Shown here: in pieces, positions 3,919-49,450 of the stretch
Position numbering within the stretch: position 1 is the stretch's first letter
Layout: each line of letters opens with the position of its first letter
Source of the DNA: Octopus bimaculoides
Lineage: Eukaryota
NCBI RefSeq assembly: GCF_001194135.2
Contig: NC_068989.1
Span: forward strand, 59,327,047 to 59,377,736
Direction: 5' to 3'
Length of the DNA stretch: 50,690 nucleotides
Notes under the pieces: model-generated
What the model was told of the DNA's origin: nothing
What the model saw: the letters and a program-made list of their open reading frames with translations, nothing else
Database searches by the model: none
Translations under genes and position numbers: made by a program

Positions 3919-4261
3919 CTTTATTGCTCTCTAATTAATGAGAACAATTAGATACTAAATTATTAATTTTGAAAGAAGGGAGGCAACCTTGTTTGAATGA
4001 AAATTAAATATATGCAATGACTGATCGTGAAATTCAGTAAGCGTTTCCAGGCAAGCTTGAGTTTTACTCGACCCTCTTCTGCGAGTCATAGTCCAAGTAT
4101 GACTCTATACTTCTAAACTCACACTCATTCCTGCATTGTATTCCCTCTTTTACTTTCTATCTTTACCTGCTTCAATCTTTAGACTATAACTATGCTGGGG
4201 TACCACCTGGAAGAAATTTTAATCGAATGAATCGACCACAGAACTTACGTTTTCTTTTAAG

Positions 4262-4370
4262 GCTGGTACTTACTCTATTGGTCTTGTTGCCGAACTGCTG
4301 GTTTACAAGGACGTAAACACACCAACAACGGTTGTCAAGCGGTGGTTTTGGACAAACACACACACACATA
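4262..4370 (-). mobile_element. Family A SINE 3' fragment
   Basis: gtaaacacaccaacaacggttgtcaagcggtgg matches the reverse complement of 1625-1665. Confidence 0.7.
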
Positions 4371-4576
4371 TCAAGCAAAAGGAGGTAGTCAGGAATTTCT
4401 TAATTTATAAAAGTTGTACACTACATCAAACAATCTATACATACAGACACATACATAGATATATACATATACATACATGTGTGTGTGTGCGTGCGCGTGT
4501 ATGTGGGTATAGATAAAACTTACTTGGAAGAGGATGCGTAGCGTTCAAGTATATTATATTATATTATATTATATAT

Positions 4577-5116
4577 NNNNNNNNNNNNNNNNNNNNNNNN
4601 NNNNNNNNNNNNNNNNNNNNNNNNNNNNNNNNNNNNNNNNNNNNNNNNNNNNNNNNNNNNNNNNNNNNNNNNNNNNNNNNNNNNNNNNNNNNNNNNNNNN
4701 NNNNNNNNNNNNNNNNNNNNNNNNNNNNNNNNNNNNNNNNNNNNNNNNNNNNNNNNNNNNNNNNNNNNNNNNNNNNNNNNNNNNNNNNNNNNNNNNNNNN
4801 NNNNNNNNNNNNNNNNNNNNNNNNNNNNNNNNNNNNNNNNNNNNNNNNNNNNNNNNNNNNNNNNNNNNNNNNNNNNNNNNNNNNNNNNNNNNNNNNNNNN
4901 NNNNNNNNNNNNNNNNNNNNNNNNNNNNNNNNNNNNNNNNNNNNNNNNNNNNNNNNNNNNNNNNNNNNNNNNNNNNNNNNNNNNNNNNNNNNNNNNNNNN
5001 NNNNNNNNNNNNNNNNNNNNNNNNNNNNNNNNNNNNNNNNNNNNNNNNNNNNNNNNNNNNNNNNNNNNNNNNNNNNNNNNNNNNNNNNNNNNNNNNNNNN
5101 NNNNNNNNNNNNNNNN
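4577..5116. other. Assembly gap (540 N) flanked by AT microsatellite
   Basis: Run of N. Confidence 1.
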
Positions 5117-5604
5117 ATATGCATATATACATACGTAGATGTAGAAACTTACATTTATACGTATATATATGCATATGTGGGCACAGGACGTCACGAAACG
5201 TGTACAACAAAGAAATACGAAGTACGAGTACATGGAATATGAACTATTTCTTCGAACAACGAAAGACACAAATGGAAAACAAGACAAACAACATAAAGAA
5301 CGACCCTTCATTAACTGTTTTGCTGTTTTTCTACTCTCGTATTTCGAGCATTTAACTACAATATACGCTTTCGATAAAACAGTTGCTCCTGCAAAGCAAA
5401 TTAAATAAACTTTGGGATTTTGCGGAGGTTCAAAATTGGTAACACAAACAGGACAGTGAAAGGAAACAGGAAGGGCTGCTAAGCCTAATGGAGTTTGCGG
5501 TGGCGAACGCGTAAATTAAAATTTGGACAGGAGACAGACAAGAACACGTCTTCTTTGTTTCAGCTACAACGGAGAGAAAAAAACACAAGTTAGGAGAAGA
5601 AAGA

Positions 5605-7488: not shown

Positions 7489-7668
7489 TGCTGTAGGGAA
7501 TTAATAATAATGGTACACTCTTCCTACGTGACTAATAGTATAACCTAGTCACTGAAGTAGCGGAGTACGTAATAGGCAGTCAAAGATAGTCGTGTCTTAC
7601 TGGTTTTACTAAGTATACTGTATACTGAAGTGACCGTTACAACAATCCAACATTTTAAGGATATAACA
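7489..7668 (+). repeat. 5' LTR of the Gypsy element
   Basis: TG...CA ends; direct repeat of 10093-10280, roughly 80% identical by eye. Confidence 0.9.
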
Positions 7669-10092
7669 GTGGCGACGAGAGTCACGTAGAATTAATAAAT
7701 TTGACGATGATTTTAACAACTCACGAGAAGTTAAACTCACAAAGTTTTGTTGTGTGAATTTTACGAAAAATAAATCGTAAAAATTATGGAAAATTTGCTT
7801 GGTCAAGTTGCAAAAACAGCAACAGCAACAATTACTGTTACAACAATAAATACTGCAATTAATGAAGTCGTCATGAAATTCAGAAAAAGTGTTCTAGCCA
7901 GACTATGTCGCGAACTCCATAGCAGAGTTCAAATACGAACCTGACGAAGGAGTTACCTTAGAAGCATACTACAGAAGATATGAGCAAATCTTCGGGAAAT
8001 AACGTAAAGATTGGGACAACGAGATGAAAACGCGCTTAATCTTACCAAAACTGGCGGCAGCAAAACATGAACGTTACAGCAGTTATGTACTTCCAAGGAA
8101 ACCTTCCGACATAAACTTTAATGACACAATAGATATATTGTGTAAAATTTTTAATGAAAAAAGCTCATTGTTCAACATACATTGGAAGTGTCTGAACAAA
8201 GAAAAACAACGAGGACTACAACACATATGCTAGTAGAGTAAACAGGGAATGCGAAATAAATTAACGCCAGATATGTTCAAATGCCTGATTTTTACACAAG
8301 GACTTACTGCCGAAAAGGACACAGAAGTTAAAACTAGAATTCTCGCAAAGCTGGAAAAAAACCTACAGCAAATGTCAGAAGAATGTGAAAGGATAGTCAA
8401 ATTAAGACACGACACAGAGGAAATCGAATGAAAAGATTGTTTCCAAGTAAAGCAAGTGCGAAATTGTCAGAATTGAAATAATGTGTTTTCTAAAAAAAAA
8501 AACTCGACAAAAATCAAGAAATAAACCCATGTTTTGTATGTGGAGGTATACACCTGAGGAAAAATTGTGCATTTAAAAAAAACGGAGTGCTTTCGTTGTT
8601 GTAATATAGGACATATAAAGACCCATTGTAGAATGAAGATGACAAAATGTCAGAACAAAGGAAAAAGAATAAATAGTATTTATCGGAAGAGATTGGTAAT
8701 ATAACAATGAGGAAATTCATGAAAGTGAAAATCAGAAATACAAGTGTTAGACACTGGTAGTGATATCACCATTATAAACGAAAAAACTTTGAATTATGTC
8801 GGTAAGCCGAAATTAATTAAATCGAAAATGGTGGCACATGGTGTTACGGGGAAAATATTATATTTTTTCGGTGAATTCGTATGTAATGTAATATTTCGCG
8901 GTAAAACGAAAAAAGCAGATATATGTATTAAAAAGTTCACTTAATTTATTCGGCACAGAGGGGATGGAACTATTCAAAGTATGGAATATGCCCATAAGTG
9001 TTTTGTGTGGAAATATAGTCGGTTTAGTGGAAGGTTCGAAAGGGGCCGAAGGACTGAAACAAAAAATTGCAGCAAAACAGAGTGGAACACTTGTATGTAA
9101 GCCAAAACGAAATATAAATTGCTCACGATAAAAAGTAAACATTGTTTAAAAGTTGAAGTTCCGTGGTCGAGACTACACATCGATTTCGCTGGACCTTTAA
9201 ATGCTTCATACTACTTAGTGGCAGTTGATAGTTTTTCGAAATGGCCTAAAATTTGAAAGTGTTAAAAATCAACCTTCTCAACTGTGAAATTTTTTACACG
9301 AAATGTTTGTAAGATTTGACACCCTAGACAAGATAATGTTTGATAGTGGAACGTAATTTGTGTCTAGCGAATTTTATAAACTTTGTGAAACGTTCACAGT
9401 AGAACATACTATGGCGCCATACCATCGCAGCTCTAATGGACAGGCAGAGCGCTTTATCAATGCCTTCAAAAGAGCCTTTAGAAAATCGAATAAGGAAGTC
9501 ACCGATGAGGTAGATTTACAATTTTTAAGGTTACCGTGTGACACCAAATCCGAATACACCAGTAGGTAGCTCACCAGCGGAGCTGATGTTTGCAAGGAAA
9601 GTAAAATCAGTCTTTGATAAATTGCTACTTAGTAAGAAAAGAAAAAAGTGCCAGGGAAGACATAGCAAGATTCTTTAAAGTTGGTGAAAAAGTGTATATG
9701 AGGGCATACAAGAATGGAAAGCAGAGTTGGGAAGATAACGTAGGTACCAAATGCATAAGTAAAATGAAGTGTTGGGTAAAAAGTAGAAAAGGTATACAAA
9801 AGAGACACAAGAACCAACTGAAAAAGATTCATGGAAAGCAAACCAAAGAAGTTGGAGGAACCGATAGAATGATTGTACGATACGTTCCAAGTACCAACGC
9901 CACTGCAGGTGATTGAACCCAGGCGTACAAGTGAGAGGAAGAAAAAGAGTCCCTGAAAATAGATTCCAAGCGCAAAAATATCAAATTGTAAGAAAAGAAA
10001 AGAAAAAAAACTCAAAAAAGGGAGGCGGGGGTAAATAAAAAAAGTATTGCTAAATAAAATAAACACTTCCTAAGAAAAGATTAAAGGGAAGA

Positions 10093-10280
10093 TGTTGTAG
10101 GGAATTAGTAATAATGATATAAACCCCGCCCACATGACGAATGGAATAACCTAGAGAAGTACGGGAAGTACCGGAGTACATAGTAGGCGATCAGAGATAG
10201 TCGTGTCTTTATTGGTTTTACTAAGTATACTGTATACCGAAGTGACCCTTATAACAAACCAACATTTTAAGGATATAACG
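10093..10280 (+). repeat. 3' LTR of the Gypsy element
   Basis: Follows the PPT; shares gatagtcgtgtctt..ggttttactaagtatactgtatac..aacattttaaggatataac with the 5' LTR. Confidence 0.9.
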
Positions 10281-13761: not shown

Positions 13762-14728
13762 AATTTATTTTACTCAGATGCATATTCGTTTGTTGAAATA
13801 ATATAGGGACATTCCTTATTCACCCACTAATCGAATTAATAGTTTGTAATACCTGTTTTTAGCAATAAACTATTGCCATAAACAACGGGTTGGGCATAAA
13901 GACAGGAAATGAACAGGAAAAGGGATAGGACATGGAATAGTGTAATGGTAAACGGGAACTGGGGATAATCCCCGCTTTCCCGAGTATTACCGGTCACCTC
14001 ATTTATTTTACTCAGATGCATATTCGTTTGTTAAAATAATATAGGGACATTCCTTATTCACCCACTAATCGTATTAATAGTTTGTAATACCTATTTTTAG
14101 CAATAAACTATTACCATAAAGGTTAATAAAATATTTATTGACTTAATTACACCTAACTGATTCTAAAATTTATATAGTCTTTTCTTCTCTAGGCACATGG
14201 CCCAAAAATTTTTTGGTGGGAGGGCAGTCGATTAGATTGATCCCAGTATGCAACTGGTACTTAATTTATTGACCCCGAAAAGATGAAAGGCAAAGTCGAC
14301 CTCGGCGGAATTTGAACTCAGAACGTAACGGCAGACGAAATACCGCTAAGCATTTCGTCCGGCGCCCTAACGTTTCTGCCAGCTCGCTGCCTTTCTAAAA
14401 TTTATATATTGTCATAGGATTGGGGATAGGAATGGGAGCGGAACTAAAACGGGGACTGAACAGGGAACGGGAATAGAACATGGCACAGTGTAATGGTAAA
14501 CAGGAACTGGGAATAACCCTCGCTTTCCCGGTATTACCGGTCAAGTCATTTATTTTACTCGGATGCATATTCGTTTGTTAAAATAAGGATATTCTTATTC
14601 ACCCACTAATCGTATTAATAGTTTGTAATACCTAATATTACCCTAAAGATTAATAAAATATTTAATGGATTAATTACACCTAACTGATTCTAAAATTTAT
14701 ACACTGACATGGGATTGGGAATAGGAAC
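13762..14728 (+). repeat. Three tandem copies of a ~240-320 bp unit
   Basis: atttattttactc(a/g)gatgcatattcgtttgtt..ttattcacccactaatcg..ttaatagtttgtaatacct starts at ~13762, ~14001 and ~14548. Confidence 0.92.
14177..14392 (-). mobile_element. Family B SINE with perfect 16-bp TSD
   Basis: TSD ttctaaaatttatata at 14161-14176 and 14393-14408. The head ggcagcgagctggcagaaacgttag is on the minus strand. The central block resembles the Meta/MESC SINE domain (from recall). Confidence 0.95.
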
Positions 14729-18577: not shown

Positions 18578-18948
18578 GGTTGGCACTCCGTCGGTTACGA
18601 CGTTGAGGGTTCCAGTTGATCCGATCGATGGAACAGCCTACTCGTGAAATAAACGTGCAAGTGGCTGAGCACTCCACAGACACGTGTACCCTTAACGTAG
18701 TTCTCGGTGAGATTCAGCGTGACACAGTGTGACAAGGCTGGCCCTTTGAAATACAGGTACAACAGAAACAGGCAGAAAGAGGGAGAGAAAGTTGTGGTGA
18801 AAGAGTACAGCAGGGTTCGCCACCATCCCCTTGTGGAACTTTAGGTGTTTTCGCTCAATAAACACTCACAACGCCCGGTCTGAGAATCGAAACCGCGATC
18901 CTACGACCGCGAGTCCGCTGCCCTAACGGCTGGGCCATTGCACCTCCA
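18578..18948 (-). mobile_element. tRNA-derived SINE family C
   Basis: Minus-strand head ggaggtgcaatggcccagccgttagggcagcggactcgcgg..ggtttcgattc. Matches the copies at 26104 and 27001. Flanked by (CATA)n. Confidence 0.92.
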
Positions 18949-19053
18949 CACATACATACATACATACATACATACAAACAAACAATCATACATGCATACA
19001 TACAGATAGACAAACATTCAGACAGACAGACAGACAGATAGATGGACAAGCGA

Positions 19054-20095
19054 GGAACCTCTCCCATCCTGACAATTACCTTATTATCTTTCTTAATTTC
19101 AGCATTTCAATGTGATGGAAACAGAATTTAAACAATTATGTCCCTTATTAGCTCGAGTTCCTCCTAAATGGCACCGATACGATTTCTTTGGAGCCGAGTT
19201 TACCGGAGATTTACTCTCCAATGTCACTCACTAGTCGTCTCTCGCTGTCAAGAAGTCTGACGAAAGTCATGATGTTGCCCACGATGTTAAAGTCTTTGAC
19301 CATATCTGGCCTTTAATATAAGTGATCATATATTATTATTACTATTAAGGTGGTGAGCTGGCAGAATCGTTAGCACGCTGGGCAAAATGCTTAGCAGCAT
19401 TTCGTCCGTCTGCACATTTTGAGTTCAAATTCCGCCGATGTCGAGTTTGCTTTTTAGCTTTTCGCAGTCGATGAAGTACCATCTGAAAACTGGGATCGAG
19501 GTAATCGACTTAAACTCTCCCTTGAATTTGCTGGCCTTGTGCCAAAATTTGAAACCAAAATATTATGCTACTGTATATACAACAACCATTAACTTCTTAA
19601 AGCTATCTGTTAGATTAACAAAGACTCATGCAACATCCACTTGCTCAACAGACCCTTCACAAAAGAATACACACCAAATTTTTGCTTCATAGAATTTCAA
19701 TACTCCGAAATGAAATACCCTTAGAACTGTGTGTTTATTGTGCAACACTTAAAGAGAATTTAATCATGAAGCAGAAGCGTCTAAATACGCCAATCATCTT
19801 CAGCTGATGAAGCCTTTATGATCGATATCCTCGCAGATGCTGTGTTCTGTGTTTATATTAAAGACAACACTAGATGCTTCACTTACGGTAAAAGCAGGCA
19901 TCACTCGTAGTTTATACTCGGAACCTCTCCCATCCTGACAATTATATCATCTTCCTTAATTTCAGCATTTCAATGCGATGGAAACAGAATTTAAACAATT
20001 ATGTCCCTTATTAGCTCGAGTTTCTCCTAAATGGCACCGATACGATTTCTTTGGAGCCGAGTTTACCGGAGATTTGCTCTCCAATGTCACTCACT
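19054..20095 (+). repeat. Dispersed ~178-bp direct duplication (19054-19232 and 19920-20095)
   Basis: ggaacctctcccatcctgacaatta...ctctccaatgtcactcact occurs twice with few differences. Confidence 0.95.
19347..19560 (+). mobile_element. Family B SINE
   Basis: aaggtggtgagctggcagaatcgttagcacgctgggcaaaatgcttagc...ggccttgtgccaaaatttgaaacc. Confidence 0.9.
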
Positions 20096-23972: not shown

Positions 23973-24640
23973 TCCCTATCATTATTTGTTAAAATTAGCA
24001 AGCTTCATTCATCAAGGGTTCAATGGAGCTGATTTTTCTCTCTATGAAGGCCAAAATGATTGATTTTGTCCTATTTTATATAACTAATCTATTAGCTGAG
24101 AAAGAAAAGTTTGAAGATACAGCTACAATTGATTTACGGTAGGAAAATAAATGAAAAAAAATCCTTAAAGAATATTAAGAAACATGAAGAATTTTTAATG
24201 GATAAATTTAGCTTGTCTACTCTGTCGGAACAATTGTTAAAACAACAGATTAAAACTTGTTTGACTAAAGCTGTTGAGCAAACAATGGTAGCTTGTGGTA
24301 AAAGAGCCAGATTAGTTAATGTTAACATGAACGTGGAAGGCAGTGACAAGAAAATCACCCAAAGGAGCGTGTAGCAACGAGGGAGGAAATAAGAGTATTT
24401 ACTTTCAGACAAGTAGAATTTGCTCGAGAATGTAATTATCTAGTTTAAATTGAATTATAGACATAATGATTTATGCTGACTGATAGTGGTCTTACCCATG
24501 AATAAAGTTCAGTACCTGGAGCAGGAATATAATTCTTTGTAATCTACATCAAGACATAGTTGTTAAAGGCAGCAGTATACCAGTTTACATACTGAAAGGT
24601 TGATGGTTCATACTCCACTAAATTCTGTATCCCTGGTTAT

Positions 24641-24987
24641 TCTTTTATTCTTTTACTTGCTTCAGTCATTTGATTGTGGCCATGCTGGAGCACTGCCTTA
24701 AAGGTTTTAGTCAAACAAATCAACTCCAGGACTTTTTTTTAAGCCTAGTACTTATTTTCTCCGTCTCTTTTGCTGAACCACTAAGTTATGGAGATGTAAA
24801 CACACCAACACTGTTATCAAGTGGTGATGACACACACACACATACACATATATACGATGGGTTTCTTTCAATTTCCGTCTCTCAAATTCACTCAAGGCTT
24901 TGGTCAGCCTGAAACACTTGCCCAAGGTGCTATGCAGTGGAACTGAACCTGGCACCATGTGGTTGGGAAGCAAGCTTCTTGCCACAT
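24641..24987 (-). mobile_element. Family A (CORE-like) SINE
   Basis: Reverse complement of the 1422-1807 type; acacttgcccaaggtgc; internal (CA)n. Confidence 0.88.
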
Positions 24988-26103: not shown

Positions 26104-26485
26104 GTTGTTGGCAGTCTGTCGGTTATGACGTCGAGGGTTCCAGTTGATCCGATCAACGGAACAGCCTGCTCGTGAAATTAACATGCAAGTGGTTGAGCAC
26201 TCCACAGACACGTGTACCCTTAACGTAGTTCTCGGGGAGATTCAGCGTGACACAGTGTGACAAGGCTGACCCTTTGAATTACAGGCACCACAGAAACAGG
26301 AAGTAAGAGTGACAGAGAGTTGTGGTGAAAGAGTACAGCAGGGTTCACCACCATCCCCTGCCGGAGCTTCGTGGGGCTTTAGGTGTTTTCGCTCAATAAA
26401 CACTCACAACGCCCTGTCTGGGAATCGAAACCACGATCCTATGACCGCAAATCCGCTGCCCTAACCACTGGGCCATTGCGCCTCC
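26104..26485 (-). mobile_element. Family C SINE with 15-bp TSD
   Basis: TSD actggttgtggttta at 26089-26103 and 26486-26500. Confidence 0.95.
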
Positions 26486-27000
26486 ACTGGTTGTGGTTTA
26501 ATAATAATGATAATAGACATTGAATTTAGTTAACTTCAACATTGTTCCTCACTTGCATAAAATCCTCTTTTGTTTTTTTAGAAAATCTATGCTACCATAA
26601 GAAAACTATCAGAAACATTTTTGTTAAACAATTTGTGCTCTCTTACTTCAACCACCCATTGTTTGGAGTTCAAAAAACCCTTTATCCATTCACTCAGTTT
26701 AAAAGAAAAAATTTAAATCAATAACATACTTGAAATTCTGACTAAACTAACATCTTTGGAATGCCAAAGCACTGTAAAACAGACATTGTTTATTTGCAAA
26801 GTAAATGTACAACTTTGTCATTCTGTTATCCTCAGTTAACTAACATTCTGGTCATGCTGGGGCATCATTTAGTTTTGCACAAATAGATTGACTCCAGTTC
26901 TTATTTCATTATTTTGTATTTGACTGCTAATGTTAAAGGATATAAAGCTACACAACATAAACACCACCACCAGAAGTTAGAGCTATGTGAATGTAAACAT

Positions 27001-27381
27001 TTGTTGTTGTTGGCACTCCGTCAGTTACGACGTCGAGGGTCCCAGTTGATCTGATCAACGGAACAGCCTGCTCGTAAAATTGTGCAAGTGGCTGAGCACT
27101 CCACAGACACGTGTACCCTTAACGTAGTTCTCGGGGAGATTCAGCGTGACACAGTGTGACAAGGCTGACCCTTTGAATTACAGGCACAACAGAAACAGGA
27201 AGTAAGAGTGAGAGAAAGTTGTGGTGGAAGAGTACAGCAGGGTTCACCACCATCCCCTGCCGGAGCCTCGTGGAGTTTTAGGTGTTTTCGCTCAATAAAC
27301 ACAACGCCTGGTCTGGGAATCGAAACCGCGATCCTATGACCGTGAATCCGCTGCTCTAACCACTGGGCCATTGCGCCTCCA
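27001..27381 (-). mobile_element. Family C SINE
   Basis: Near-identical to 26104-26485; (GTT)n at the tail end. Confidence 0.92.
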
Positions 27382-27821
27382 CAATATTTAATACAAGCAG
27401 ATATGAAAACACACATACGCATATGCAGACACATTACAGACTTCTGTACCTTTTCCATCTACCAAATTCCACTTCAAAGATATTGGTTATCTCAGTAGCT
27501 ACAATAGAAAATATCTGAGATATAGACTAAATCACTCTCATGGTTTAACACCACGACCAGTTGACCTTTGAGCTTGTTTATCAGGGAGTCCACTCTGTTG
27601 CAAATATTTAGGCCAGTTCTCTGGTTTGAAGATAACTACTTTCTGCTCTTCACATTAATTATGGTGGTTTTGAAATAAATCAAAGGCACTGCTTTGGTTC
27701 TTCTAAATCGCTATGACAAAATGCATCAGTTTTCAAGATTTATATATGATCACATGTTTAAAACATTTTCCATAAGCGAAGGAGATCATAATTATTATTA
27801 TTTTGTGAAAATAGACAAGTC

Positions 27822-27967
27822 GGAAGTGGCTGTGTGGTAAGTAGCTTGCTTACCAACCACATGGTTCTAGGTTCAGTCCCACTGCGTGGCACCTTGGGCA
27901 AGTGTCTTCTACTATAGCCTCGGCCCGACCAAAGCTTTGTGAGTGGATTTGGTAGACTGAAAGAAGC

Positions 27968-28036
<69 letters not shown>

Positions 28037-28262
28037 GTATGTGTATGTTTGTGTGTCTGTGTTTGTCCCCCCAACATCGCTTGACAACCAATGGTGGTGT
28101 GTTTACGTCCCTGTAACTTAGCGGTTCAGCAAAAGAGATCGATCGAATAAGTACTAGGCTTCCAAAGAATAAGTCCTGGGGTCGATTTGCTTGATTAAAG
28201 GTAATGCTCCAGCATGGCCACAGTCAAATGACTGAAACAAGTAAAAGAGTAAAAAGAGTAAA
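27822..28262 (+). mobile_element. Family A (CORE-like) SINE with internal (TA)n
   Basis: Collinear with 1422-1807; (TA)n at ~27973-28029; tail (aaaagagt)n. Confidence 0.92.
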
Positions 28263-29256
28263 AGTCACTTGTATAATGATTGTCAGAAAACAATGGCATC
28301 AGAACTTGCACCATTGAGTCTGTGAAGGAAATAAAGTTTCACAAACTAAAGATATGAGACTAAAGTTAGATGCTATAAGCACACACATATCCTCATTGAA
28401 TTCTAAAGTAAAATGTTATGATTCTGACTATGTACTCCCTGATTTCCCTTACTAAGTACAATTAATGTAAGCACCCAGCAATCAGGTCAAACCATGTTTC
28501 AATTCCTTCTCAATGATATTTCATTGAATGGCAATGCTCTTGAAAAAGATATGACCCTCACACAATCATCTTATCCATCTTTAATTAACTCAGCCGTATT
28601 TTATTTTGAAAGTTAATCAAATATAAACTGAATATTTTTGTTATTATACATTTTATGTTTTTCTTTTCTACAAAAATAAAAATATTACAATTTTCAAAAT
28701 ATATTCTTGGAAATCATGAATTTATAAACAAAAGTGGAATTTTTATGTTTATGGATTTATTTTGAAATGTCACATTTGAAAGATAACGGAAATATTAAGA
28801 TTTAGAATTTCATTTAAATTTTGAAATATGTTGTGTCATCACTCAACAACCTGAATATGTGACCAAATATGTCTCAGTAGACAGCATTTCACTTTACTGA
28901 TACTGCTCACACTTAAAGGAAAGACGTGAATGTTATGACATCCCATTTTCTCTTTTCTCATAAATAAATGAAATTAAAATTTCATTTAATAACTAGAGTT
29001 AAAATCAATCATTCTTGAATATTAGAATTCTAGCGGGCAGGTTCTTAATTTTTGTTTTTGTAAAGGATGAACGAAAATGTTCACTGGATAAGACACTAAT
29101 CTACCACAGCTAGACTTTCCCAGAAAGCTTTTGAAGCTAGTTAAATTGAGAGAATGTTTAACCATATGAACTAAAGAAATGCCTGCAGTTGAACTTATGA
29201 CCCTTTGGTTGCTAATCCACTTTTTTTCCTTTAAATTATCATTATTAAATAGAAAT

Positions 29257-29472
29257 GAAAGGTGGTGAGCTAGCAGAATCGTTAGCATGCCAGGCAAAAT
29301 GCTTAACAACATTTCATCCATCTTAATGTTCTGAGTTCAAATTCCTCTGAGGTCGACTTTGCTTTCATCTTTTCAGGATCAATAAAATATGTACCAGTTG
29401 AACACTGAAGTTGATGCAATTGTCTTACCCACTTTCCACTAAAATTGCTGGCCTTGAGCCAAAATTTGAAAC
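29257..29472 (+). mobile_element. Family B SINE with 17-bp TSD
   Basis: TSD cattattaaatagaaat at 29240-29256 and 29473-29489. Confidence 0.93.
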
Positions 29473-30312
29473 CATTATTAAATAGAAATTATAAACTACT
29501 CTAATAAATAGATAGTCGTGTCTGTTTGACAATAGCTTATTTTATGCAACTATGATTCAAGTATTATCACAATAAAATATAAACCACCTTAATTTTCACT
29601 CTCTTCCTCTCTCTTTTTTTACTTTAAGCTGTCTGGTATCAAATTCACAAAACTTTGTGGAAAGCTTTCCAGTTGGGTGCACACTAACACCAGTCTCATT
29701 AGTAATGATTTCTTTCTTCAGTGATATATTCTCAGAGGAAAGGAAATAGAAAATGTGAAGTTGTTGATACTTCTCCTAAAGCACTAACCATATACCTATG
29801 TAAATCAAAGCCAGTAAGTACACTCAGATAGCTGTGAGTTTCTACATGGTCATGTAATTCACCCAGTACAGTAGCTACACACACACACACACACAGTCTC
29901 CAGAAACTTTTATTCAAGAAATACTGACCATGTTTCAATTTCTAAATCTAATAACTATAATAAATACAGGATTATCTTACCTAGCTCAATATACACCATT
30001 GTCATTATTTTGTATAACATTCTGCCTTGTTTAAGGGCAAAACAAGCCACTTGGTTTGGGGAGCTGAAGCCACAATCTTATGTTTGTACATCCAGCAGCT
30101 TAGCACAAGGTCATGTCCCTTCCCTATAATATATATATTTACACTCATACATTCACTCACTACATCAAAGTGGTTGTTCCATGTTACTAGTTTAACCCCA
30201 GGCAGATCTTCCACCAGCTGGTTATTGGTGCAGCACTGCACCCTGTATATATACATATATATTATATTGCTAGCAGGAGGAGTAAACCCCTACCATCCTC
30301 TAGCAGACAATA

Positions 30313-30365
30313 GGATCACAAGACTCGGTTTCAAGCTGGTTGGCTCATTTTCAGTTGTTAGTACG
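30313..30365 (-). ncRNA. Decayed hammerhead ribozyme motif, second copy
   Basis: Minus strand reads acaa-CTGAaaA-t-GAGC-caacca-GCTT-GAAAC-cga-GTC-ttgt; core G8 is mutated. Confidence 0.5.
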
Positions 30366-30992
30366 TGGTCGTCAGAGCGATAGCCAGGGTCTGCTCCAGT
30401 TGGCAATTTATTGTAAACAAAGCGATAATTGGTTACTAATTTCGAACAAGCAAAATAACTAGTTGTAAAATCTCAAGAGATCAGAGTCGTAACTATACTA
30501 ACAAGTAAAGTTAATCGCAACATCAAAGTGGTTGTTCCATATTACTATGCCAGCTGGTTATTGGAGCACACTGCACCCTGTATATACATATCTATTACTA
30601 GCTGGGGGAGCAAACCCCTACCACCCTCTAGCAGACAACAGGATCATGAGTCTGACTCAGTTTCAAGCTGGTTGAGTTAGTCTCATGATCCTGTTGTCTG
30701 TTAGAGGATGATAGAGGTTTGTACCCCTGCTAACAATATATATGTATATACAGCATGCAGCGCTGCACTGATAACTAGCTGGTGAAAGATCTGCCTAGGG
30801 TTAAACTAGTAGCAATGTGGAACAAGTTAATTGATGTGGTGATTAACTTGTTAGTATAGTTATTACTCTGATCTCTTTTTGAGATTATGCAACCAGCTAT
30901 TTTGCTTGTTGCAAGTCAGTGACTGATGGTCATTTTGTTTACAATATATTGCTGGCTGGAGCGGACCCTAACTATTGCTCTGGTGACCAGGT

Positions 30993-31044
30993 ACCAGTGA
31001 CTGATGAGGAGCCAACCACCTCAATACTGAGTCAGTCTCGTGGT
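30993..31044 (+). ncRNA. Decayed type I hammerhead ribozyme motif
   Basis: CTGATGA (31001-31007), G, GAGC-caacca-cCTC, aata in place of GAAA, CTG-agt-CAGT, C (GUC at 31035-31037), then tcgtggt pairing imperfectly with accagtga. Sister copies on the minus strand keep GAAA. Confidence 0.6.
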
Positions 31045-31284
31045 CTTGTTCTCTGCTAGAGGATGGTGAGAGTTCACTCCCCCTGCTAGCAATATATATA
31101 TATATATATATATATAAGCAAGCATATATCTATAATGGCTAATAAAACAAATGGTTTACACATGTTGAGTGTCCCACCCATGAGGAATTGATGTTAGATG
31201 TGTCAAAACAATTGTCATGATTAATAATGAATTCTTGTATATTCCGTCTTCTGTCTTTCATTTGCTATCTATCTATCTATCTAT

Positions 31285-32152: not shown

Positions 32153-32442
32153 ATATATCTGGTTCAATTCCTATTATAATCCTTTTATACTCTCTTCTTT
32201 GTTATGAATAATGATTTCTTGTATAGCTAGAGAGCCAATAATTGAGGCCCAAGGATGTAATTGACTTTATTAATACTTATTTAATTGATTTCAATGGCAT
32301 AAAAAGCAAAGAAGATCCAAGTGTATGAACTCAGTTAAGAGGATTGAAACTAAATCTATGCATTAGACAGGTTCTCTTACATCTCATTTGATCTACATTC
32401 ATAGTGCATTGTTGTACCATTCAAAACTTTTTATTCATTATA

Positions 32443-32735
32443 TCATCATCATCATCATCATCGTTTAACATCCGCTTTCCATGCTAGCATGGGTTGGACG
32501 ATTTGACTGAGGACTGGTGGAAACCGAAGGCTACACCAGGCTCCAATCTGATTTGGCAGAGTTTCTACAGCTGGATGCCCTTCCTAACGCCAACCACTCC
32601 GAGAGTGTAGTAGGTGCTTTTACGTGTCACCGGCACGAAGGCCAGTCAGGCGATACTGGCAACAGCCACGCTCAAAATGGCGTATTTTATGTACCACCAG
32701 CACAAGAGCCAGTCCAGGGGCACTGGCAACGATCA
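32443..32735 (-). mobile_element. RTE-related non-autonomous retroposon (family D) with (GAT)n tail
   Basis: Minus strand has ggttggcgttaggaagggcatccagctgtagaaac...cccatgctagcatggaaagcggatgttaaac(gat)n. Older relatives at ~39890, ~47508 and ~38050. Confidence 0.8.
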
Positions 32736-33562: not shown

Positions 33563-34010
33563 TGGCAACAAGCTGGCAGAATCATTAACTCACTAAAGCG
33601 GTGAGCTGACAGAAACGTTAGCACGCCGGGTGAAATGCTTTGCGGTATTTTGTCTGCCATTACGTTCTGAGTTCAAATTTTGCCGAGGTCAACTTTGCCT
33701 TTCATCCTTTTGGGGGTTGATAAATTAAGTACCAGTTACGCACTGGAGTCGATGTAATTGACTCAATCTCTTTGTCTGTCCTTGTTTGTCCCCTCTATGT
33801 TTAGCCCCTTGTGAGCAATAAAGAAATAAGAATCATTAACACACTAGATAAAATACTTAGTGGTATTTCATGTCTTTATGTTCTGAGTTCAAATTCTGCT
33901 GAAGTTGACATAACCTTTCATCAATGAAATAAGTATAAATAGAGCATTGGAATCAATGTAACTGACTAGACCCCTCCACTAAAATTTCAGACCTTGTGTC
34001 TATAGTAGAA
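33563..34010 (+). mobile_element. Young family B SINE (33596-33829) nested inside an older family B SINE
   Basis: TSD gaatcattaac(t/a)cacta at 33579-33595 and 33830-33846; the outer copy resumes after it. Confidence 0.9.
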
Positions 34011-34228
34011 AGGATTGTCAACTAATCAAGTGAGTATATAGGCTCATTCTGCCATTCCCTAATAGTCCCTTTTGTAATCTTGTACATGAAGCAGGGATAC
34101 ATATTTTTCCACAGAAGCCACTTTTGTTGCTAAATCTGTTACATTAAGCAATTAAGTGATGCTGATACAGTTTTTTACATGTTATAAAGTCTTAGAAACA
34201 ATTGTCCAAAATTGTTGATAGTATTACA

Positions 34229-34432: not shown

Positions 34433-36300
34433 TTAAAGTTTAAACCTCAGTAACATTATATTATTTACTTTCATTGTCATCCTTTAGGCTTCATGTATTT
34501 TTGGTAAATCAGGTTATTGAGGGCTAAATTAACTCTTGAATTAGTTAACCATTTTAGAATCGAGTCAACTTCACTAGATATTTACATTCTAATCCTTTCA
34601 GCTTGAGTTCATATATTACAGAGGTCTTTACAACTCTCTCACCACATAAAACTGGGTTCACTGTGTTAGTATAAGATGCCTTAACCTTCTCATCAACCCT
34701 TTCTAGCATTTATAAAAGTAACGTACCCACTATTTTTTTGTCATTTTACCAAACTACTAAAATCTTTTGTTTTTATACTTATAGTATCTTAATGTCTTTC
34801 TGTTACTGCCAATACTATGAACAATCATCTAGTGTCAGGAAAATTTAACTTTTCAATACCAGTAATATAATTATAATCCTCTTCCATGACTGACTGATTG
34901 CTAGAAACACCTGAGAATAAAGGTGTTGGTGATCAAAGGATAAATTAAAGAAAGCAATCAGTCCATAATTTAGAAGGTTCTGAAGATTTAGTTGTAGTGT
35001 AAACTATTAAAGAATCTACTTTAAACTTGATATGTCTTCATTGATAATGTTAAGCAATGCAACTAACATTTCGTTCTAACTAGTTTTGAACTAAAACAAT
35101 GGCAAATATAACGAGCTTTCTTGAGAAACACCTTAAAATCATCCCCACCATTATTTTAGAAACACATTTTCCCTGCTGCCATAGCTCAATTGAGTTTTTA
35201 GTGGCAAATTGCCACTTGTTTCAATAGTGAGGTGCAACATACATCCTCTCACATATTCCTTGGCTTTTCACTTCTACAAATACTCTCCACTCCTCATTCA
35301 TTTATTGTACAGATCCATGGTGATATGGTTGTCTTTTCTGTATGCAATACTTGACACTATGTGTGTGTTCTTTGGGCCAGCAGTACTTCTCTCACTCATT
35401 CTTTGTATAAAATCAACTGTTGTTAATTTTCATTACTATCATATATTATTCTAATGATCTCACTTTGGTACTTCCTGCATTAAATTTGTCTTGTCTGACT
35501 CCCAGATTCTACTGAATTAGAATTAAGACAAATATCTTGGGACTCCATTGAGAAATGCTGAAGGGAAATAAAACAATGCCAGTTTTGTCCTCTTTGAATT
35601 TACTTCTTCATCATATATATAATTTATTTTTGTTTTTGAAGGAAGTTGTGTCAGAAGAGACTATCTTAAGCAAAAAGAATGGACTCTCTTTATTTTACAC
35701 CTACACATTGGAAACTGAAAATAGATGTTCTTCAATTATCTACATGATATAAGCAAATCATTCTCAAAGACAAGCATGTCTGTTCTTAAAAGAAGAATTG
35801 CTATCATTTACACCACAAAACAATGTTAGTAAAACTTAACATTTGTGATATTTTTCCTGATTATTTTTTGTCTCTACAAACTTACACTGTAATATTACAG
35901 TGTATTCACCCAACTAATGGGTACAGTCTTCTAAAACATTAATGAAAAATCAATACTGGAAATTGATTTCTACCCGAAACAATTGTTTTTGTCCAGTATT
36001 TGTTCTCTAATATATCTCTCATTTCCTAATGGCATCTACTTTTTATTTTGTATTCAGACAAATGCTAAGGAGAAAGTGGAATACATTTGGAGAAAAGATA
36101 ATAACTCTATCTCAGTTGAACTTTATATTTAGTCATTACAGATAAAGCCATGCTGGAGCTCTACCAAACTGACTAGTTAATCCAGTTTGTGGTTACTTTT
36201 CTGAAATATCATCTCAAATATCCCTAGTATGCTCAAACATATTACACCTTCACAACCTGTAATTTAATATCCTATTCTTTGCAAGCCTAGAACTTATTCT

Positions 36301-36556
36301 ATCAGTCTCTTTTGCCGAACCGCTAAGTTACGGAGGATGTAAACACACCACCATCGGTTGTCAAGCGATGGTGGGGGGACAAACACAAACACACACATAT
36401 ATATATATATATACACATATGTATGACAGGCTTCTTTCAGTTTCCGTCTACCAAATCCACTCACAAGGCTTTGGTCAGCCCGAGGCTATAGTAGAAGACA
36501 CTTGCCCAAGGTGCCACGCAGTGGGACTGAACCCAGAACCATGTGGTTGGTAAGCA
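36301..36556 (-). mobile_element. Family A (CORE-like) SINE, partial
   Basis: cgaggctatagtagaagacacttgcccaaggtgccacgcagtgggactgaaccc is the reverse complement of the family A head. Confidence 0.9.
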
Positions 36557-40356: not shown

Positions 40357-40944
40357 GGTCTGATCAATAAGTTTCCGGACTGTTGCCATGGTAATGAAGT
40401 TAAAGCACACAGTGAAGCCGCTTGGCACAGATTGACCTTGAATTCTGCTGTGCATGTGCACTAAGTTTTAATGTTCTAGCTCACTTCCACTGTTTATAGC
40501 AGTGCTTGGAAGGAACATATGTAGCATATGATCATCACATTGACTATGACTGGGAAGGTTGCGCAGAGAATCTGCATCAAACTTTGCAAAAAGCTTGGCG
40601 ATACCTGCTCAGAGGCCAATACAAAGTTTTCAAAAAGTTTTCATCATTCTTGGCACACTCGAGATCTTGTGCAACTGAAACCCGAGTGTTTCTTCGGTCA
40701 GCTGAAAGCAGTTTTGGCACAGACTTGGCAGACATGCATCTCATACCCAAATCTTCAGTGATAATGAACTGAACCGCAACTAATCTGCATATCCTCTGAT
40801 AACTCAAGGATGGTGATTCGACAATTTCCCTCACAGCTGCATGCAATGTTTTTCTCAGTTCTGCTGGTTGCAAGTCTATCTGAACCACTTGTACATTTGT
40901 GAGCAGCTCATACACTCCTCTCCATATACTTTCTGCAACCTTGT
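40357..40944 (+). mobile_element. Mariner relic with an internal inversion (40621-40944)
   Basis: TIR-like ggtctgatcaataagtttccggact. Plus strand encodes MTGKVAQRICIKLCKKLGDTCSEA from 40546. The continuation TRLQKVYGEECMSCSQMYKWF..ITEDLGMRCMSAKSVPKLL..NDENFLKTL is on the minus strand. Confidence 0.9.
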
Positions 40945-42151
40945 CATGTTTTGCAGGGTGGTGTTTCAATTTAGCTTACTTAGTAATTTTAACCCTATTG
41001 TGATTTGTAGAGTGGCTTTGGATTACTGATGTCACTTTTAGTAAAAAGTGAAATGTGTGCCTTGAGATGTCTACATCCAAATGAAAACATTAGGCCTTAA
41101 CTAATATTTCTTTTGCAAAGTGAGGGAATTCAGTTATTTAAAAAATGTCCTAGTCATTAAATATATCTTCACCAAATTAGCTGTCTAATTATGATGTGGA
41201 CTGTCTGAAAGAAGGCTAATTTAGCCATGTCACTGTTTACCTTCCCCATTCCAGCAAATGTACCCTTTAGTATAATTGATATTGCAAGTTACTTGCGAAG
41301 ACTAAGTAACAGAAAGATTGTTTTTTTCTGAAAAGCCTTCAAGATAACAAGAATACATCAAGAGAGAGTAAAACTTATTAGTATTCAAAAAGAAAAAGAA
41401 AATGTAGTATTCCTTTAGTTGCATGTGTGGATATTTTAGTTACTTAATGGTCTGGTAATTAAATTCACTTGTAATATATCTATGTAACAACAACTCATTT
41501 CCACATTAGAATTTGCCCTGCCTAAAAAGCAGTATTAAAGCAGGTATTGTCAAGTATCTGTATCATACAGCTGTGGTGGTTAAGTGGTCATTTCAAGGAA
41601 ATGACTCACCAAAGATAGTGTTTTGATGCTTTTTTTTTTTATGAAATCAAGTCATACCAAAAATATTTTGTAAAAAAAAAATACAAAAATGGCGATACTG
41701 GTTATCACCTCTATTTTATGAGTTTATCTCTGTAATCAATATTATTTGCAAGTGAGAAACTTTTCTGATGTTAAAAAAGAGCAACAGAAATTACCCTTAT
41801 TCTTTATTGGCCAACACCCAAGTGATAAGGTTGAACAATAATCATAACTAAATGCTATCTCAGCTGAAGAAAGTCAGACATCAGATTTAGTATAAAAACG
41901 TACAACACTCAATTGTTTCATTGGATTATGATTAAGGAAGTGTATTGTCAGCAATTGCATTTATATCTCATATCTTTAATGAGCAGATAACTATGAAGCA
42001 GGTAAAGCAGTAAAAGTCAATGGTTATAAAAAAAATGTTGCTCAATAAACTGAGACACCATTTAATTAATTTGTTATATTTCTTGAGAAATGTGATATAA
42101 AACCAAGAGAGAAAAGAAAAGTTAATTGCATATTCTTAAATATTGAAAGTG

Positions 42152-49033: not shown

Positions 49034-49324
49034 TATTGACTGTTTTTAAAGGGTAGTGCATAGATTAACATCATTTTGGTGTCCACTTTTTTATGCTTCC
49101 ATGGTTCAGATAGAATACATTGAGGCAGATTTTCTGTGACTCTCCTTACCTGTTTCAAAGCAAGGTAACATTTTCCTCACAGGGTAATGGTTTGCTTCCC
49201 AGGGAAGGTTAGACATTAAGGTTTTATGATTGTTTCACTCTTTTTATGACTATCAAATGATGCCAACATAAGGAGAGAAACACAAACACACACACACACA
49301 CACAACACACACACACACACACAC

Positions 49325-49450
49325 AGAGGCTTCTTTCAGCTTTTGTCTACCAAAACCACTCATAAGGCATAGACTATAGTACAAGACACTTCCCCAAAGA
49401 CCCATACAATGAGACTGAACTCAAAACTACATGGTCAGGAAACAAACTTC
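49325..49450 (-). mobile_element. Degenerate family A SINE fragment
   Basis: ggcttctttcag..gtctaccaa..actatagtacaagacacttcccc. Confidence 0.6.

What the first reader, a model, noticed from the sequence alone, without database searches (positions are those of the whole stretch)
30162..31115. Hammerhead ribozyme hidden in a ~358-bp tandem repeat: candidate cephalopod retrozyme or Penelope pLTR family
Seen: three homologous segments. Plus strand 30993-31044 reads CTGATGA-G-GAGCcaaccaCCTC-AATA-CTGagtCAGT-C-tcgtggt. Minus strand 30313-30365 reads CTGAAAA-T-GAGCcaaccaGCTT-GAAA-Ccga-GTC-ttgtg. Minus strand 30641-30675 reads caaccaGCTT-GAAA-CTGagtCAGAC-tcatg. Each copy is damaged at a different position. 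Their consensus is CUGAUGA-(G)-GAGC/GCUC stem II-GAAA-short palindromic stem III-GUC. The variants gctTgaaa and ctcAata are the two CpG-decay products expected from an ancestral GCTCGAAA. Known: type I hammerheads with short or palindromic stem III, one per 150-400 bp monomer, characterise metazoan non-LTR retrozymes and Penelope pseudo-LTRs. Inference: this is a decayed copy of a ribozyme-bearing, non-coding mobile family that may make circular RNAs. One extra nucleotide between A9 and stem II is non-canonical. Whether the family is already described is unknown to me.
Basis: partly seen in the sequence, partly recalled or inferred. Interest (0 to 1): 0.85.

Follow-up and report, generated by a model that had tools for sequence, protein, structure and literature searches.

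The report
Dead hammerhead-ribozyme retroelement in octopus DNA
This ~1-kb stretch is most likely an old, mutated insertion of a small non-coding mobile element that once carried a self-cutting hammerhead RNA; it belongs to a kind already known in other invertebrates, and every ribozyme copy here is now broken.

Summary
The three hammerhead-like segments are at the stated coordinates. The array is not a plain 358-bp tandem. It is two partial tandems of a ~355-bp unit joined head-to-head: 1.5 units on the minus strand (30150-30674) and 1.25 units on the plus strand (30673-~31106).

No present copy is an intact ribozyme. M2 has G8>A, P2 has G12>A and A14>U, and M1 lacks the 5' half and has U16.1>A. 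Rfam gives no significant hammerhead hit.

A rule-based ancestor (CpG rule plus majority) restores a complete type I hammerhead, with one unresolved position, G8 versus A8. My descriptor expects a perfect match by chance about 1e-5 times per unit.

The extra nucleotide after A9, the 4-bp helix I, the near-palindromic helix III and the tandem/inverted layout next to (TA)n are published traits of Penelope-like-element hammerheads and insertions.

Shared repeats and transposon proteins indicate an Octopus genome. No other family copy could be retrieved, so there is no family-wide consensus or covariation.

Verdict: a decayed member of the known non-LTR retrozyme / Penelope pLTR class. Confidence is moderate-high and novelty is low.

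The parts
30150..30321 (-). Mb: distal partial unit of the minus arm. It covers the first ~172 nt of the monomer counted from the ribozyme cleavage site. The outer end lies at about 30150-30160.
   Evidence: blastn unit 7-170 = 30325->30157, 79%. Alignment A1. 85% identical to Ma.
30318..30358 (-). M2: hammerhead relic. ACAA / CTGAAAA (G8>A) / extra U / GAGC-caacca-GCUU / GAAA / helix III A-C-cga-G-U (4-nt AGTC deletion) / C17 / UUGU. Predicted cleavage site lies between 30322 and 30321.
   Evidence: Coordinates verified. It is the only descriptor hit with <=1 core mismatch in the window. No Rfam hit.
30322..30649 (-). Ma: full monomer of the minus arm (328 nt; carries a 25-nt deletion and smaller deletions relative to Pa).
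   Evidence: blastn 72% over unit 1-349. Alignments A1 and A2, 79% identity on aligned columns.
30650..30674 (-). M1: 5'-truncated hammerhead relic, loop II to C17 only: caacca-GCUU-GAAA-CUGagUCAG-A(U16.1>A)-C. This is the 5' end of the minus arm.
30599..30733 (.). Head-to-head junction of the two arms (centre about 30666). As RNA it would fold into a ~65-bp hairpin. It is a by-product of the inverted arrangement.
   Evidence: Inverted repeat I5, 55-nt arms, 85% complementary, 13 nt apart. MFE -90 kcal/mol, z -13. Only sub-threshold miRNA-model hits, mir-4524 at 51 bits against a gathering score of 68.
30673..30682 (+). P1: the last 10 nt of a hammerhead (helix III 3' part plus UC; TGAGTTAGTC). 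This is the 5' end of the plus arm.
30683..31037 (+). Pa: full 355-nt monomer of the plus arm, from cleavage site to cleavage site. It has a long-range helix pairing nt ~11-40 with nt ~285-311.
   Evidence: Linear fold z -2.75. Circular fold 68% paired, z -2.6. The helix is kept in both Pa and Ma.
30997..31041 (+). P2: hammerhead relic. GUGA / CUGAUGA (intact) / extra G / GAGC-caacca-CCUC / AAUA (G12>A, A14>U) / helix III ACUG-agu-CAGU / C17 / UCGU. Predicted cleavage site lies between 31037 and 31038.
   Evidence: Coordinates verified. Descriptor hit with 2 core mismatches. Only a 13.9-bit partial hit to the Rfam hammerhead clan, E = 1.1.
31038..31116 (+). Pb: distal partial unit of the plus arm (first ~55-78 nt of the monomer). 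It ends inside the unit's own TA-rich tract, which runs into (AT)12 at 31092-31116.
   Evidence: blastn unit 1-78 = 31028-31106, 81%. TRF (AT)n at 31092-31116.
30125..30140 (.). TA-rich tract about 10-20 bp outside the minus arm's outer end. Together with the (AT)n on the right, it suggests insertion into a (TA)n microsatellite.
   Evidence: The sequence itself. (TA)n target bias of Penelope-like elements: PMC8557442. This is an inference, because TA tracts are frequent in this window.

Best explanation
The locus is one ancient, now neutral insertion of a small (~355 nt) non-autonomous retroelement of the non-LTR retrozyme / Penelope pLTR kind, in an Octopus genome.

The ancestral unit carried one type I hammerhead ribozyme:
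- 5'-RCGA | CUGAUGA | N | GAGC-CAACCA-GCUC | GAAA | CUG-AGU-CAG-U | C (cut) UCGU-3'
- Helix I has 4 bp.
- One unpaired nucleotide sits between A9 and G10.1.
- Helix II has 4 bp with a G10.1-C11.1 pair.
- Helix III is near-palindromic (ACUGAGUCAGU).

Inferred life cycle, by analogy with described retrozymes:
- Tandem copies are transcribed.
- Hammerheads, probably paired as dimers through the palindromic helix III, cut the multimer after GUC into ~355-nt monomers.
- A host tRNA ligase circularises the monomers.
- The RNA is copied into DNA in trans by the reverse transcriptase/GIY-YIG endonuclease of an autonomous Penelope-like element. This produces the characteristic partial tandem plus an inverted, 5'-truncated copy, here apparently within a (TA)n tract.

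Since insertion, the four unit copies have each drifted roughly 8-12% from their ancestor, largely through CpG decay. Every hammerhead is now inactivated, so this locus is a fossil.

Shown: the architecture, the motif, the mutations and the octopus origin. Inferred: self-cleavage, circularisation and mobilisation by a Penelope-like element.
For: (1) Motif. All core blocks and three helices occur in the right order once per unit. The descriptor scan finds M2 as the only hit with <=1 core mismatch in the window, and none in 44 kb of other octopus DNA. Chance rates are 0.15 per window for one mismatch and 0.0015 per window, or 1e-5 per unit, for none.

(2) Reconstruction. A fixed rule (CpG rule where copies show CG/TG/CA, otherwise majority) gives a perfect core in all 64 resolutions of the ambiguous sites if position 8 is G, and one mismatch if it is A.

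(3) CpG decay. 21 of 67 Pa/Ma substitutions are of CpG-decay type. The transition:transversion ratio is 46:21 and only 0-8 CpGs are left per copy.

(4) Match to published Penelope-type hammerheads (PMC4209133):
- a G10.1-C11.1 pair;
- a helix I of 4-5 bp;
- a palindromic helix III / loop 3;
- pairs of motifs on opposite strands 100-700 bp apart.
The palindromic 8-10-nt helix III also matches coral and mussel retrozyme clones, ACAGUACUGU and ACGCGCGU (supplement of PMC7229834).

(5) Dimer. Cofolding two ancestral motifs gives an intermolecular extended helix III at -32.2 kcal/mol, against 2 x -13.4 for two monomers.

(6) Unit. 355 bp and 41% G+C, head-to-tail. This matches metazoan retrozymes (150-450 bp, <50% G+C; mussel 350-390 bp).

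(7) Architecture. Partial tandem plus an inverted 5'-truncated copy joined at the 5' ends, with TA tracts at both outer ends, is the typical Penelope-like-element insertion (PMC8557442). Pairwise identities of the four copies are star-like at 76-86%, consistent with one event.

(8) Host.
- The best protein hits of the neighbouring retrotransposon are from Octopus sinensis and O. bimaculoides.
- The window shares many interspersed repeats with both genomes.
- Penelope elements are abundant in octopus genomes (PMC8967140).
- A cephalopod genome (giant squid) gave 235 Rfam Hammerhead_1 hits (PMC6962438).

(9) Rod-like fold. A 24-bp long-range helix is kept in both full monomers, and Pa is 68% paired as a circle.
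Against: - No copy is intact. Rfam 15 gives no hammerhead hit at gathering score or at E<=10 over the locus. The only hit is a 13.9-bit, E = 1.1 partial hit at P2.
- The CUGAUGA box is present in only two copies, which disagree at the essential G8 (G versus A), so the ancestral state there is a coin toss.
- The evidence comes from one locus with 2-4 related copies. There is no family consensus and no real covariation. The helix I changes are explained by CpG decay, which keeps pairing in 3 of 4 cases by chance.
- The reconstructed 58-nt motif does not adopt the hammerhead fold as its monomer MFE: -7.5 kcal/mol against -13.4 for an alternative in which CUGA pairs with UCAG.
- The self-pairing z-scores (-2.6 for Pa, -1.0 for Ma) lie within the range of control windows.
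- Helix II (4 bp) is shorter than the 6-8 bp reported for Penelope min-hammerheads.
- No Penelope ORF was seen in the window.
- The family could not be found elsewhere.
Confidence: 0.72

Rival explanations
1. Chance resemblance. The ~355-bp unit is an ordinary satellite or an unrelated interspersed repeat (SINE, MITE or foldback element) that was locally duplicated and inverted. In this reading the hammerhead is assembled by picking the best residues from several decayed copies.
For: - Hits with 2 core mismatches occur about 2 times per window by chance, and in real octopus DNA.
- No Rfam support.
- G8 is unresolved.
- The hammerhead fold is not the monomer MFE.
- No second locus of the family was found.
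Against: - A hit with <=1 mismatch falling inside the only ~355-bp repeat of the window has a chance of about 1e-3 per unit.
- The fixed-rule ancestor reaches 0 mismatches, or 1 if position 8 is A.
- The extra nucleotide, the G10.1-C11.1 pair restored by the CpG rule, the palindromic helix III and the tandem/inverted layout all independently match the Penelope-type description.
- No tRNA-like or other small-RNA head was detected.
Confidence: 0.17
2. Fragment of an autonomous Penelope-like element rather than a retrozyme. In this reading the repeats are pseudo-LTRs of heavily 5'-truncated Penelope copies whose ORF part has been lost.
For: - Penelope pLTRs carry hammerheads with the same extra nucleotide, and insertions are tandem/inverted with strong 5' truncation.
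- Retrozymes and pLTRs are phylogenetically interleaved in Xenopus (bioRxiv 10.64898/2026.07.22.740005), so the boundary between the two is soft.
Against: - Units follow each other head-to-tail every ~355 bp with one ribozyme each and no room for an ORF.
- None of the ten window ORFs put through Pfam matched an RT or GIY-YIG domain, and inspection of all ORFs of at least 70 aa showed none.
- A truncated autonomous copy would be expected to keep 3' ORF sequence next to the pLTR.
Confidence: 0.08
3. Functional hairpin-RNA or microRNA-like locus. In this reading the inverted arms are retained because transcription yields a long hairpin that is processed into small RNAs.
For: - A very stable ~65-bp hairpin at 30599-30733 (-90 kcal/mol, z -13).
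- Sub-threshold hits to miRNA models on both strands.
Against: - The hits are below gathering score (51 against 68 bits) and nearly equal on both strands, as expected for any inverted repeat.
- The arms are no better conserved than the tandem copies.
- The hairpin is explained by the head-to-head insertion architecture.
- There is no expression evidence.
Confidence: 0.03

Closest known systems
Metazoan non-LTR retrozymes (Cervera & de la Pena 2020, PMC7229834), e.g. the Mytilus galloprovincialis 350-390-bp repeats and the Acropora millepora 220-240-bp repeats
   Same: - A short head-to-tail unit (~355 bp) of low G+C, non-coding, with one type I hammerhead per unit.
- A 4-bp helix II.
- A palindromic helix III of 8-11 nt. 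The coral clone has ACAGUACUGU, the mussel clone ACGCGCGU and this element ACUGAGUCAGU.
- A rod-like long-range pairing of the monomer.
   Different: - There are only 1.25 and 1.5 units per arm, arranged as an inverted pair rather than a long direct array.
- Helix I has 4 bp instead of about 6 bp, with no recognisable loop 1 / loop 2 contacts.
- There is an extra nucleotide between A9 and G10.1.
- All ribozymes here are mutated.
- Expression, cleavage and circularity are untested.
Minimal or atypical hammerheads in the pseudo-LTRs of Penelope-like elements (Cervera & de la Pena 2014, PMC4209133; Frangieh et al. 2024, PMC11167929)
   Same: [quoted passage not shown]
- A G10.1-C11.1 pair.
- A short helix I (4-5 bp).
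- A palindromic helix III / loop 3, with likely action as a dimer.
- Motif pairs on opposite strands a few hundred bp apart.
- Tandem/inverted, 5'-truncated insertion architecture with a microsatellite target (PMC8557442).
   Different: - Helix II is 4 bp, not 6-8 bp.
- Helix III is a real 4-bp stem rather than 0-1 bp.
- No RT/GIY-YIG ORF sits between or beside the repeats.
- No 30-40-bp 'tail' could be identified.
Amphibian satellite 2 / axolotl retrozymes and Schistosoma Sm-alpha repeats (classical type I hammerhead tandem repeats)
   Same: A ~330-350-bp repeat unit carrying a type I hammerhead that needs a dimeric conformation because helix III is weak (PMC7229834).
   Different: - Those families occur as thousands of copies in long arrays and are demonstrably transcribed and cleaved.
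- Here there is a single decayed locus, with no sequence similarity tested.

Membership tests
Hammerhead ribozyme, type I | Conserved core C3 U4 G5 A6 N7 G8 A9 ... G12 A13 A14 ... (A15.1-U16.1) H17 | tested here: not met
   No extant copy has the full core. M2 has G8>A. P2 has G12>A and A14>U. M1 lacks C3-A9 and has U16.1>A. The rule-based ancestor meets it only if position 8 is resolved as G.
Hammerhead ribozyme, type I | Three helices around the core, with helix I open and helices II and III closed by loops | tested here: met
   - P2: helix I 4 bp (2 of them G-U), helix II 3 of 4 bp, helix III 4 bp.
- M2: helix I 4 bp, helix II 4 bp (1 G-U), helix III 2 bp.
- Ancestor: 4, 4 and 4 bp.
Hammerhead ribozyme, type I | Match to the curated covariance models (Rfam clan CL00010) at gathering score | tested here: not met
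   No hit at gathering score. No hit at E<=10 over 2.3 kb. The best result is 13.9 bits against a gathering score of 37, E = 1.1, a partial hit at P2. Nothing was found at M2.
Hammerhead ribozyme, type I | Covariation supporting helices I-III across family members | tested here: inconclusive
   Only 2-4 related copies exist at one locus. Helix I shows G-C versus A-U and wobble changes that CpG decay alone explains. No other family member could be retrieved.
Hammerhead ribozyme, type I | Mg2+-dependent self-cleavage 3' of H17 | not testable with these tools
   This needs in vitro transcription of the consensus monomer and dimer.
Metazoan non-LTR retrozyme | Short (150-450 bp) head-to-tail repeats, low G+C, no LTR/PBS/PPT and no ORF | tested here: met
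   The unit is 355 bp (328 bp in the deleted copy) with 41% G+C. Head-to-tail junctions lie at 31037/31038 and 30322/30321. There are only short spurious ORFs. The criteria come from PMC7229834.
Metazoan non-LTR retrozyme | One functional type I hammerhead per monomer | tested here: not met
   There is one hammerhead-like motif per monomer, but all are mutated at essential positions. This fits a dead copy of such a family, not an active member.
Metazoan non-LTR retrozyme | Expression as linear and circular RNAs of monomer size that are highly self-paired | tested here: inconclusive
   Expression is not testable here. Predicted circular folds are 68% paired with z -2.6 (Pa) and 61% paired with z -1.0 (Ma). 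Control windows range from +1.1 to -2.6. A 24-bp long-range helix is kept in both copies.
Penelope-like element pLTR hammerhead | Unpaired nucleotide between A9 and G10.1, a G10.1-C11.1 pair, a palindromic 15.2-16.2 / loop 3, and a helix I of 4-5 bp | tested here: met
   - The extra nucleotide is G in P2 and U in M2.
- G10.1-C11.1 is restored by the CpG rule.
- ACUGAGUCAGU is palindromic around a central G.
- Helix I has 4 bp.
The criteria come from PMC4209133.
Penelope-like element pLTR hammerhead | Long helix II (6-8 bp) | tested here: not met
   Helix II is GAGC/GCUC, 4 bp with a 6-nt loop.
Penelope-like element pLTR hammerhead | Flanks an ORF encoding a telomerase-like RT and a GIY-YIG endonuclease | tested here: not met
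   The ten window ORFs put through Pfam matched no RT or GIY-YIG domain, and inspection of all ORFs of at least 70 aa showed none. The only retroelement remnant is an LTR-type one at 7489-10273.
Penelope-like element pLTR hammerhead | Insertion architecture: partial tandem plus an inverted 5'-truncated copy, with a microsatellite target | tested here: met
   There are two arms joined at their 5' ends. Both are truncated 10-25 nt upstream of the cleavage site, and each is a partial tandem. TA tracts lie at both outer ends. The criteria come from PMC8557442. The target assignment is an inference.

The most novel reading that the evidence does not exclude
Octopus genomes may harbour a so far undescribed, possibly still active retrozyme family whose hammerhead is intermediate between two known kinds. 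It has the 4-bp helix II and stable palindromic helix III of canonical retrozyme ribozymes, and the extra 9/10.1 nucleotide and short helix I of Penelope pLTR ribozymes. If so, it would be a molluscan 'missing link' for the proposed descent of retrozymes from Penelope pLTRs, and a source of abundant ~355-nt circular RNAs in cephalopod tissues.
Probability: 0.25. Interest if true: 0.45.

Novelty: new member of a known kind. Interest (0 to 1): 0.3.

Why it matters
If the family consensus confirms the ribozyme, this would extend hammerhead-bearing non-autonomous retroelements to octopods. I found no paper describing them there. The only related record is 235 Rfam Hammerhead_1 hits reported for the giant squid.

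It would also add an example whose ribozyme combines retrozyme-like and Penelope-like traits. That is relevant to the recent proposal that animal retrozymes derive from Penelope pLTRs.

For genome annotation, it shows that such relics escape covariance-model scans once CpG decay has hit the core. This particular locus is a dead copy with no expected activity.

Tried and rejected
Fishing for other family copies:
- Searching the protein database with an ORF translated from the repeat gave nothing.
- A mariner-like ORF meant to reach octopus contigs also gave nothing.
- A DNA pattern matching 3 of the 4 local copies, scanned over JGI metagenomes, gave one hit. On reading, it was a chance match in a high-GC bacterial contig, L001.
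- The same pattern and a ribozyme-based pattern gave no hit in prokaryotic genome contigs or viral contigs.
- Concatenated LTR-retrotransposon fragments retrieved two Octopus proteins and hence 44 kb of O. sinensis and O. bimaculoides DNA. These contain many of the window's other repeats but no copy of this unit, no Rfam hit and no descriptor hit at <=1 mismatch.

Literature:
- String searches for the motif sequence in papers found none.

Ideas considered and set aside:
- A tRNA- or SINE-like origin was rejected: there is no tRNA and no small-RNA model hit.
- A microRNA reading of the central hairpin was rejected. The hits are sub-threshold and symmetric on both strands.
- I considered a fold-back (snap-back) replication origin for the inversion. 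The junction sequence does not match the expected product of priming at the CAA/TTG microhairpin, so I left it as unsupported.
- Helix I 'compensatory' changes were rejected as evidence, because paired CpG decay preserves pairing in 3 of 4 outcomes by chance.
- Monomer self-pairing z-scores are not clearly above background controls.
Full report
**Observation**

- P2 (plus strand, 30997-31041) reads GTGA CTGATGA G GAGCcaaccaCCTC AATA CTGagtCAGT C TCGT.
- M2 (minus strand, 30358-30318) reads ACAA CTGAAAA T GAGCcaaccaGCTT GAAA CcgaGT C TTGT.
- M1 (minus strand, 30674-30650) is only the 3' part: caaccaGCTT GAAA CTGagtCAGAC.

**Architecture**

The locus is not a plain 358-bp tandem array. Tandem Repeats Finder reports no such period.

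blastn of a reference unit (30673-31027) against the window, together with the repeat finder, shows two arms in opposite orientation.
- The plus arm has unit 1-355 (30673-31027) followed by unit 1-78 (31028-31106). It runs into (AT)12 at 31092-31116.
- The minus arm has unit 1-349 (30659 down to 30334, with deletions) followed by unit 7-170 (30325 down to 30157).
- The arms meet 5'-end to 5'-end at about 30666. Both are truncated 10-25 nt upstream of the putative cleavage site.
- The junction would fold as a ~65-bp hairpin (-90 kcal/mol, z -13). This explains the sub-threshold miRNA-model hits.

No other copy exists in the window. The four unit copies are 76-86% identical in all pairings without arm-specific clustering. 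That fits one old event followed by independent decay.

**Is it a hammerhead?**

Against:
- Rfam 15 gives nothing at gathering score and nothing from the hammerhead clan at E<=10 over the locus.
- Narrowing the search to about 90 nt gives only a 13.9-bit partial hit at P2 (E = 1.1, gathering score 37) and nothing at M2.
- Each copy is mutated at essential positions: G8>A in M2, G12>A and A14>U in P2, U16.1>A plus loss of the 5' half in M1.

For:
- I wrote a type I descriptor: CTGANGA, an optional extra nucleotide, helix II >=3 bp, GAAA, helix III 1-6 bp, H17, and helix I >=4 contiguous bp.
- In the whole window, on both strands, M2 is the only hit with <=1 core mismatch. P2 appears at 2 mismatches, together with two unrelated hits at 43072(-) and 33229(-).
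- In 44 kb of other octopus DNA there are no hits at <=1 mismatch and five at 2.
- Sixty dinucleotide shuffles and 68 Mb of first-order Markov sequence give about 2 per window for 2 mismatches. They give 0.13-0.15 per window for 1 mismatch, about 1e-3 per 355-bp unit counting both strands. They give 0.0015 per window for 0 mismatches, about 1e-5 per unit.
- P2 alone is therefore uninformative. M2 lying inside the only ~355-bp repeat of the window is unlikely by chance.

**Reconstruction**

I applied a fixed rule to the four aligned segments. Two adjacent columns become CG when the copies show only CG, TG or CA and at least two of those kinds. Otherwise the majority residue is taken, and ties are left ambiguous.

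The result is nGTACnAnCGA CTGAnnA n GAGC CAACCA GCTC GAAA C[C/T]GAGTCAGTC TCGTGATCC.
- The CpG rule restores C11.1 and G12 (TG in M1 and M2, CA in P2).
- It also restores both strands of helix I (RCGA / UCGU).
- Of the six tied columns, only one is in the core, at position 8 (G in P2, A in M2). A seventh site, C or T in helix III, I also treated as open.
- All 64 resolutions with G8 match the descriptor with zero mismatches. With A8 they have one mismatch.
- CpG decay is a real feature of these copies: 21 of 67 Pa/Ma substitutions are of that type, the transition:transversion ratio is 46:21, and only 0-8 CpGs remain per copy.

**Comparison with the literature**

Cervera and de la Pena (PMC4209133) describe hammerheads of Penelope-like elements with these traits:
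- a conserved G10.1-C11.1 pair;
- a helix I of 4-5 bp;
- a palindromic 15.2-16.2 / loop 3;
- action as dimers;
- pairs on opposite strands 100-700 bp apart.

Cloned coral and mussel retrozymes in the supplement of PMC7229834 have CTGATGA, a 3-4-bp helix II, GAAA, and a palindromic 8-10-nt helix III followed by TC (ACAGTACTGT and ACGCGCGT). The ACUGAGUCAGU found here has the same build.

Cofolding two ancestral motifs gives an intermolecular helix III (-32.2 kcal/mol against 2 x -13.4). The monomer prefers a non-hammerhead fold (-13.4 against -7.5). This is consistent with dimer-dependent activity, but it is only a prediction.

Other points of agreement:
- Metazoan retrozymes are 150-450-bp, low-GC, head-to-tail repeats. 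Mussel repeats are 350-390 bp. This unit is 355 bp with 41% G+C.
- Penelope-type insertions are partial tandems. They often have an inverted 5'-truncated copy at the 5' end and a (TA)n target bias (PMC8557442). This locus has that layout, with TA tracts at both outer ends.
- A 2026 preprint argues that animal retrozymes derive from Penelope pLTRs.

**Host and context**

- A degraded LTR retrotransposon at 7489-10273 gives its best protein hits in Octopus sinensis and O. bimaculoides.
- The window shares many interspersed repeats at 72-90% identity with loci fetched from those two genomes.
- Penelope elements are abundant in octopus genomes (PMC8967140), and the giant squid genome gave 235 Hammerhead_1 hits (PMC6962438).
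- No RT or GIY-YIG domain was found in the window. Ten ORFs were put through Pfam, and all ORFs of at least 70 aa were inspected.

**Monomer structure**

Both full monomers keep a 24-bp long-range helix joining nt ~11-40 to nt ~285-311. Pa is 68% paired as a circle (z -2.6). Ma scores z -1.0, and control windows span +1.1 to -2.6. This is compatible with the retrozyme reading but not discriminating.

**Limits**

I could not obtain any other member of the family. There is therefore no family consensus, no real covariation test and no expression evidence. The helix I changes look compensatory, but paired CpG decay preserves pairing in 3 of 4 outcomes by chance.

**Verdict**

- The best explanation (confidence about 0.72) is a fossil insertion of a hammerhead-bearing, non-autonomous, Penelope-dependent element (retrozyme / pLTR kind) in an Octopus genome.
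- A chance resemblance in an unrelated repeat remains possible (about 0.17).
- It is a new member of a known kind, and every copy at this locus is dead. Interest is modest.

Noticed in passing
window 1428-1806, 4145-4371, 24634-24986, 27825-28262, 36271-36556, 49286-49448: Six copies of a SINE-like interspersed repeat. Several have a microsatellite in the middle. They are 74-90% identical to O. sinensis L002 18960-19354. The spurious ORFs share motifs such as 'EAIVEDTCPRCHAVGLNPEPCGW'.
   Followed up: partly
window 18581-18967, 26109-26487, 27011-27383: Three copies of another repeat family containing the doubled decamer CAGCGTGACA (TRF). It is related to L002 7415-7567 and 14862-15078.
   Followed up: no
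window 7489-10273: A degraded LTR-type retrotransposon. It has a DUF7083 gag-like piece, a DTGS protease motif and an integrase fragment, with the RT region missing. It is 77% identical in DNA to an O. sinensis 'K02A2.6-like' locus.
   Followed up: partly
window 40580-40975 (-): A 132-aa open frame that by eye looks like the N-terminal part of a mariner/Tc1 transposase. It has no Pfam hit and no hit in the protein database.
   Followed up: partly
window about 4575-5124: A run of 550 N, an assembly gap. It creates artificial long ORFs of X residues.
   Followed up: no
window 3561-3914, 14135-14393, 19345-19559, 29240-29470, 33594-34014 and 32422-32719: Further short interspersed repeats shared with the two fetched Octopus loci at 70-84% identity. 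The window appears to be largely repeat-derived, with no evident host exon.
   Followed up: no
window 43072 (-) and 33229 (-): Two hammerhead-descriptor hits with 2 core mismatches, outside any repeat. This matches the chance expectation of about 2 per window.
   Followed up: yes
window 30975-31000 (+): A small hairpin (CUGGU...ACCAG) lies just upstream of the P2 CUGAUGA box. It produced a weak partial alignment to the Rfam type II hammerhead model (13.9 bits). It is not conserved in the minus-arm copy.
   Followed up: partly
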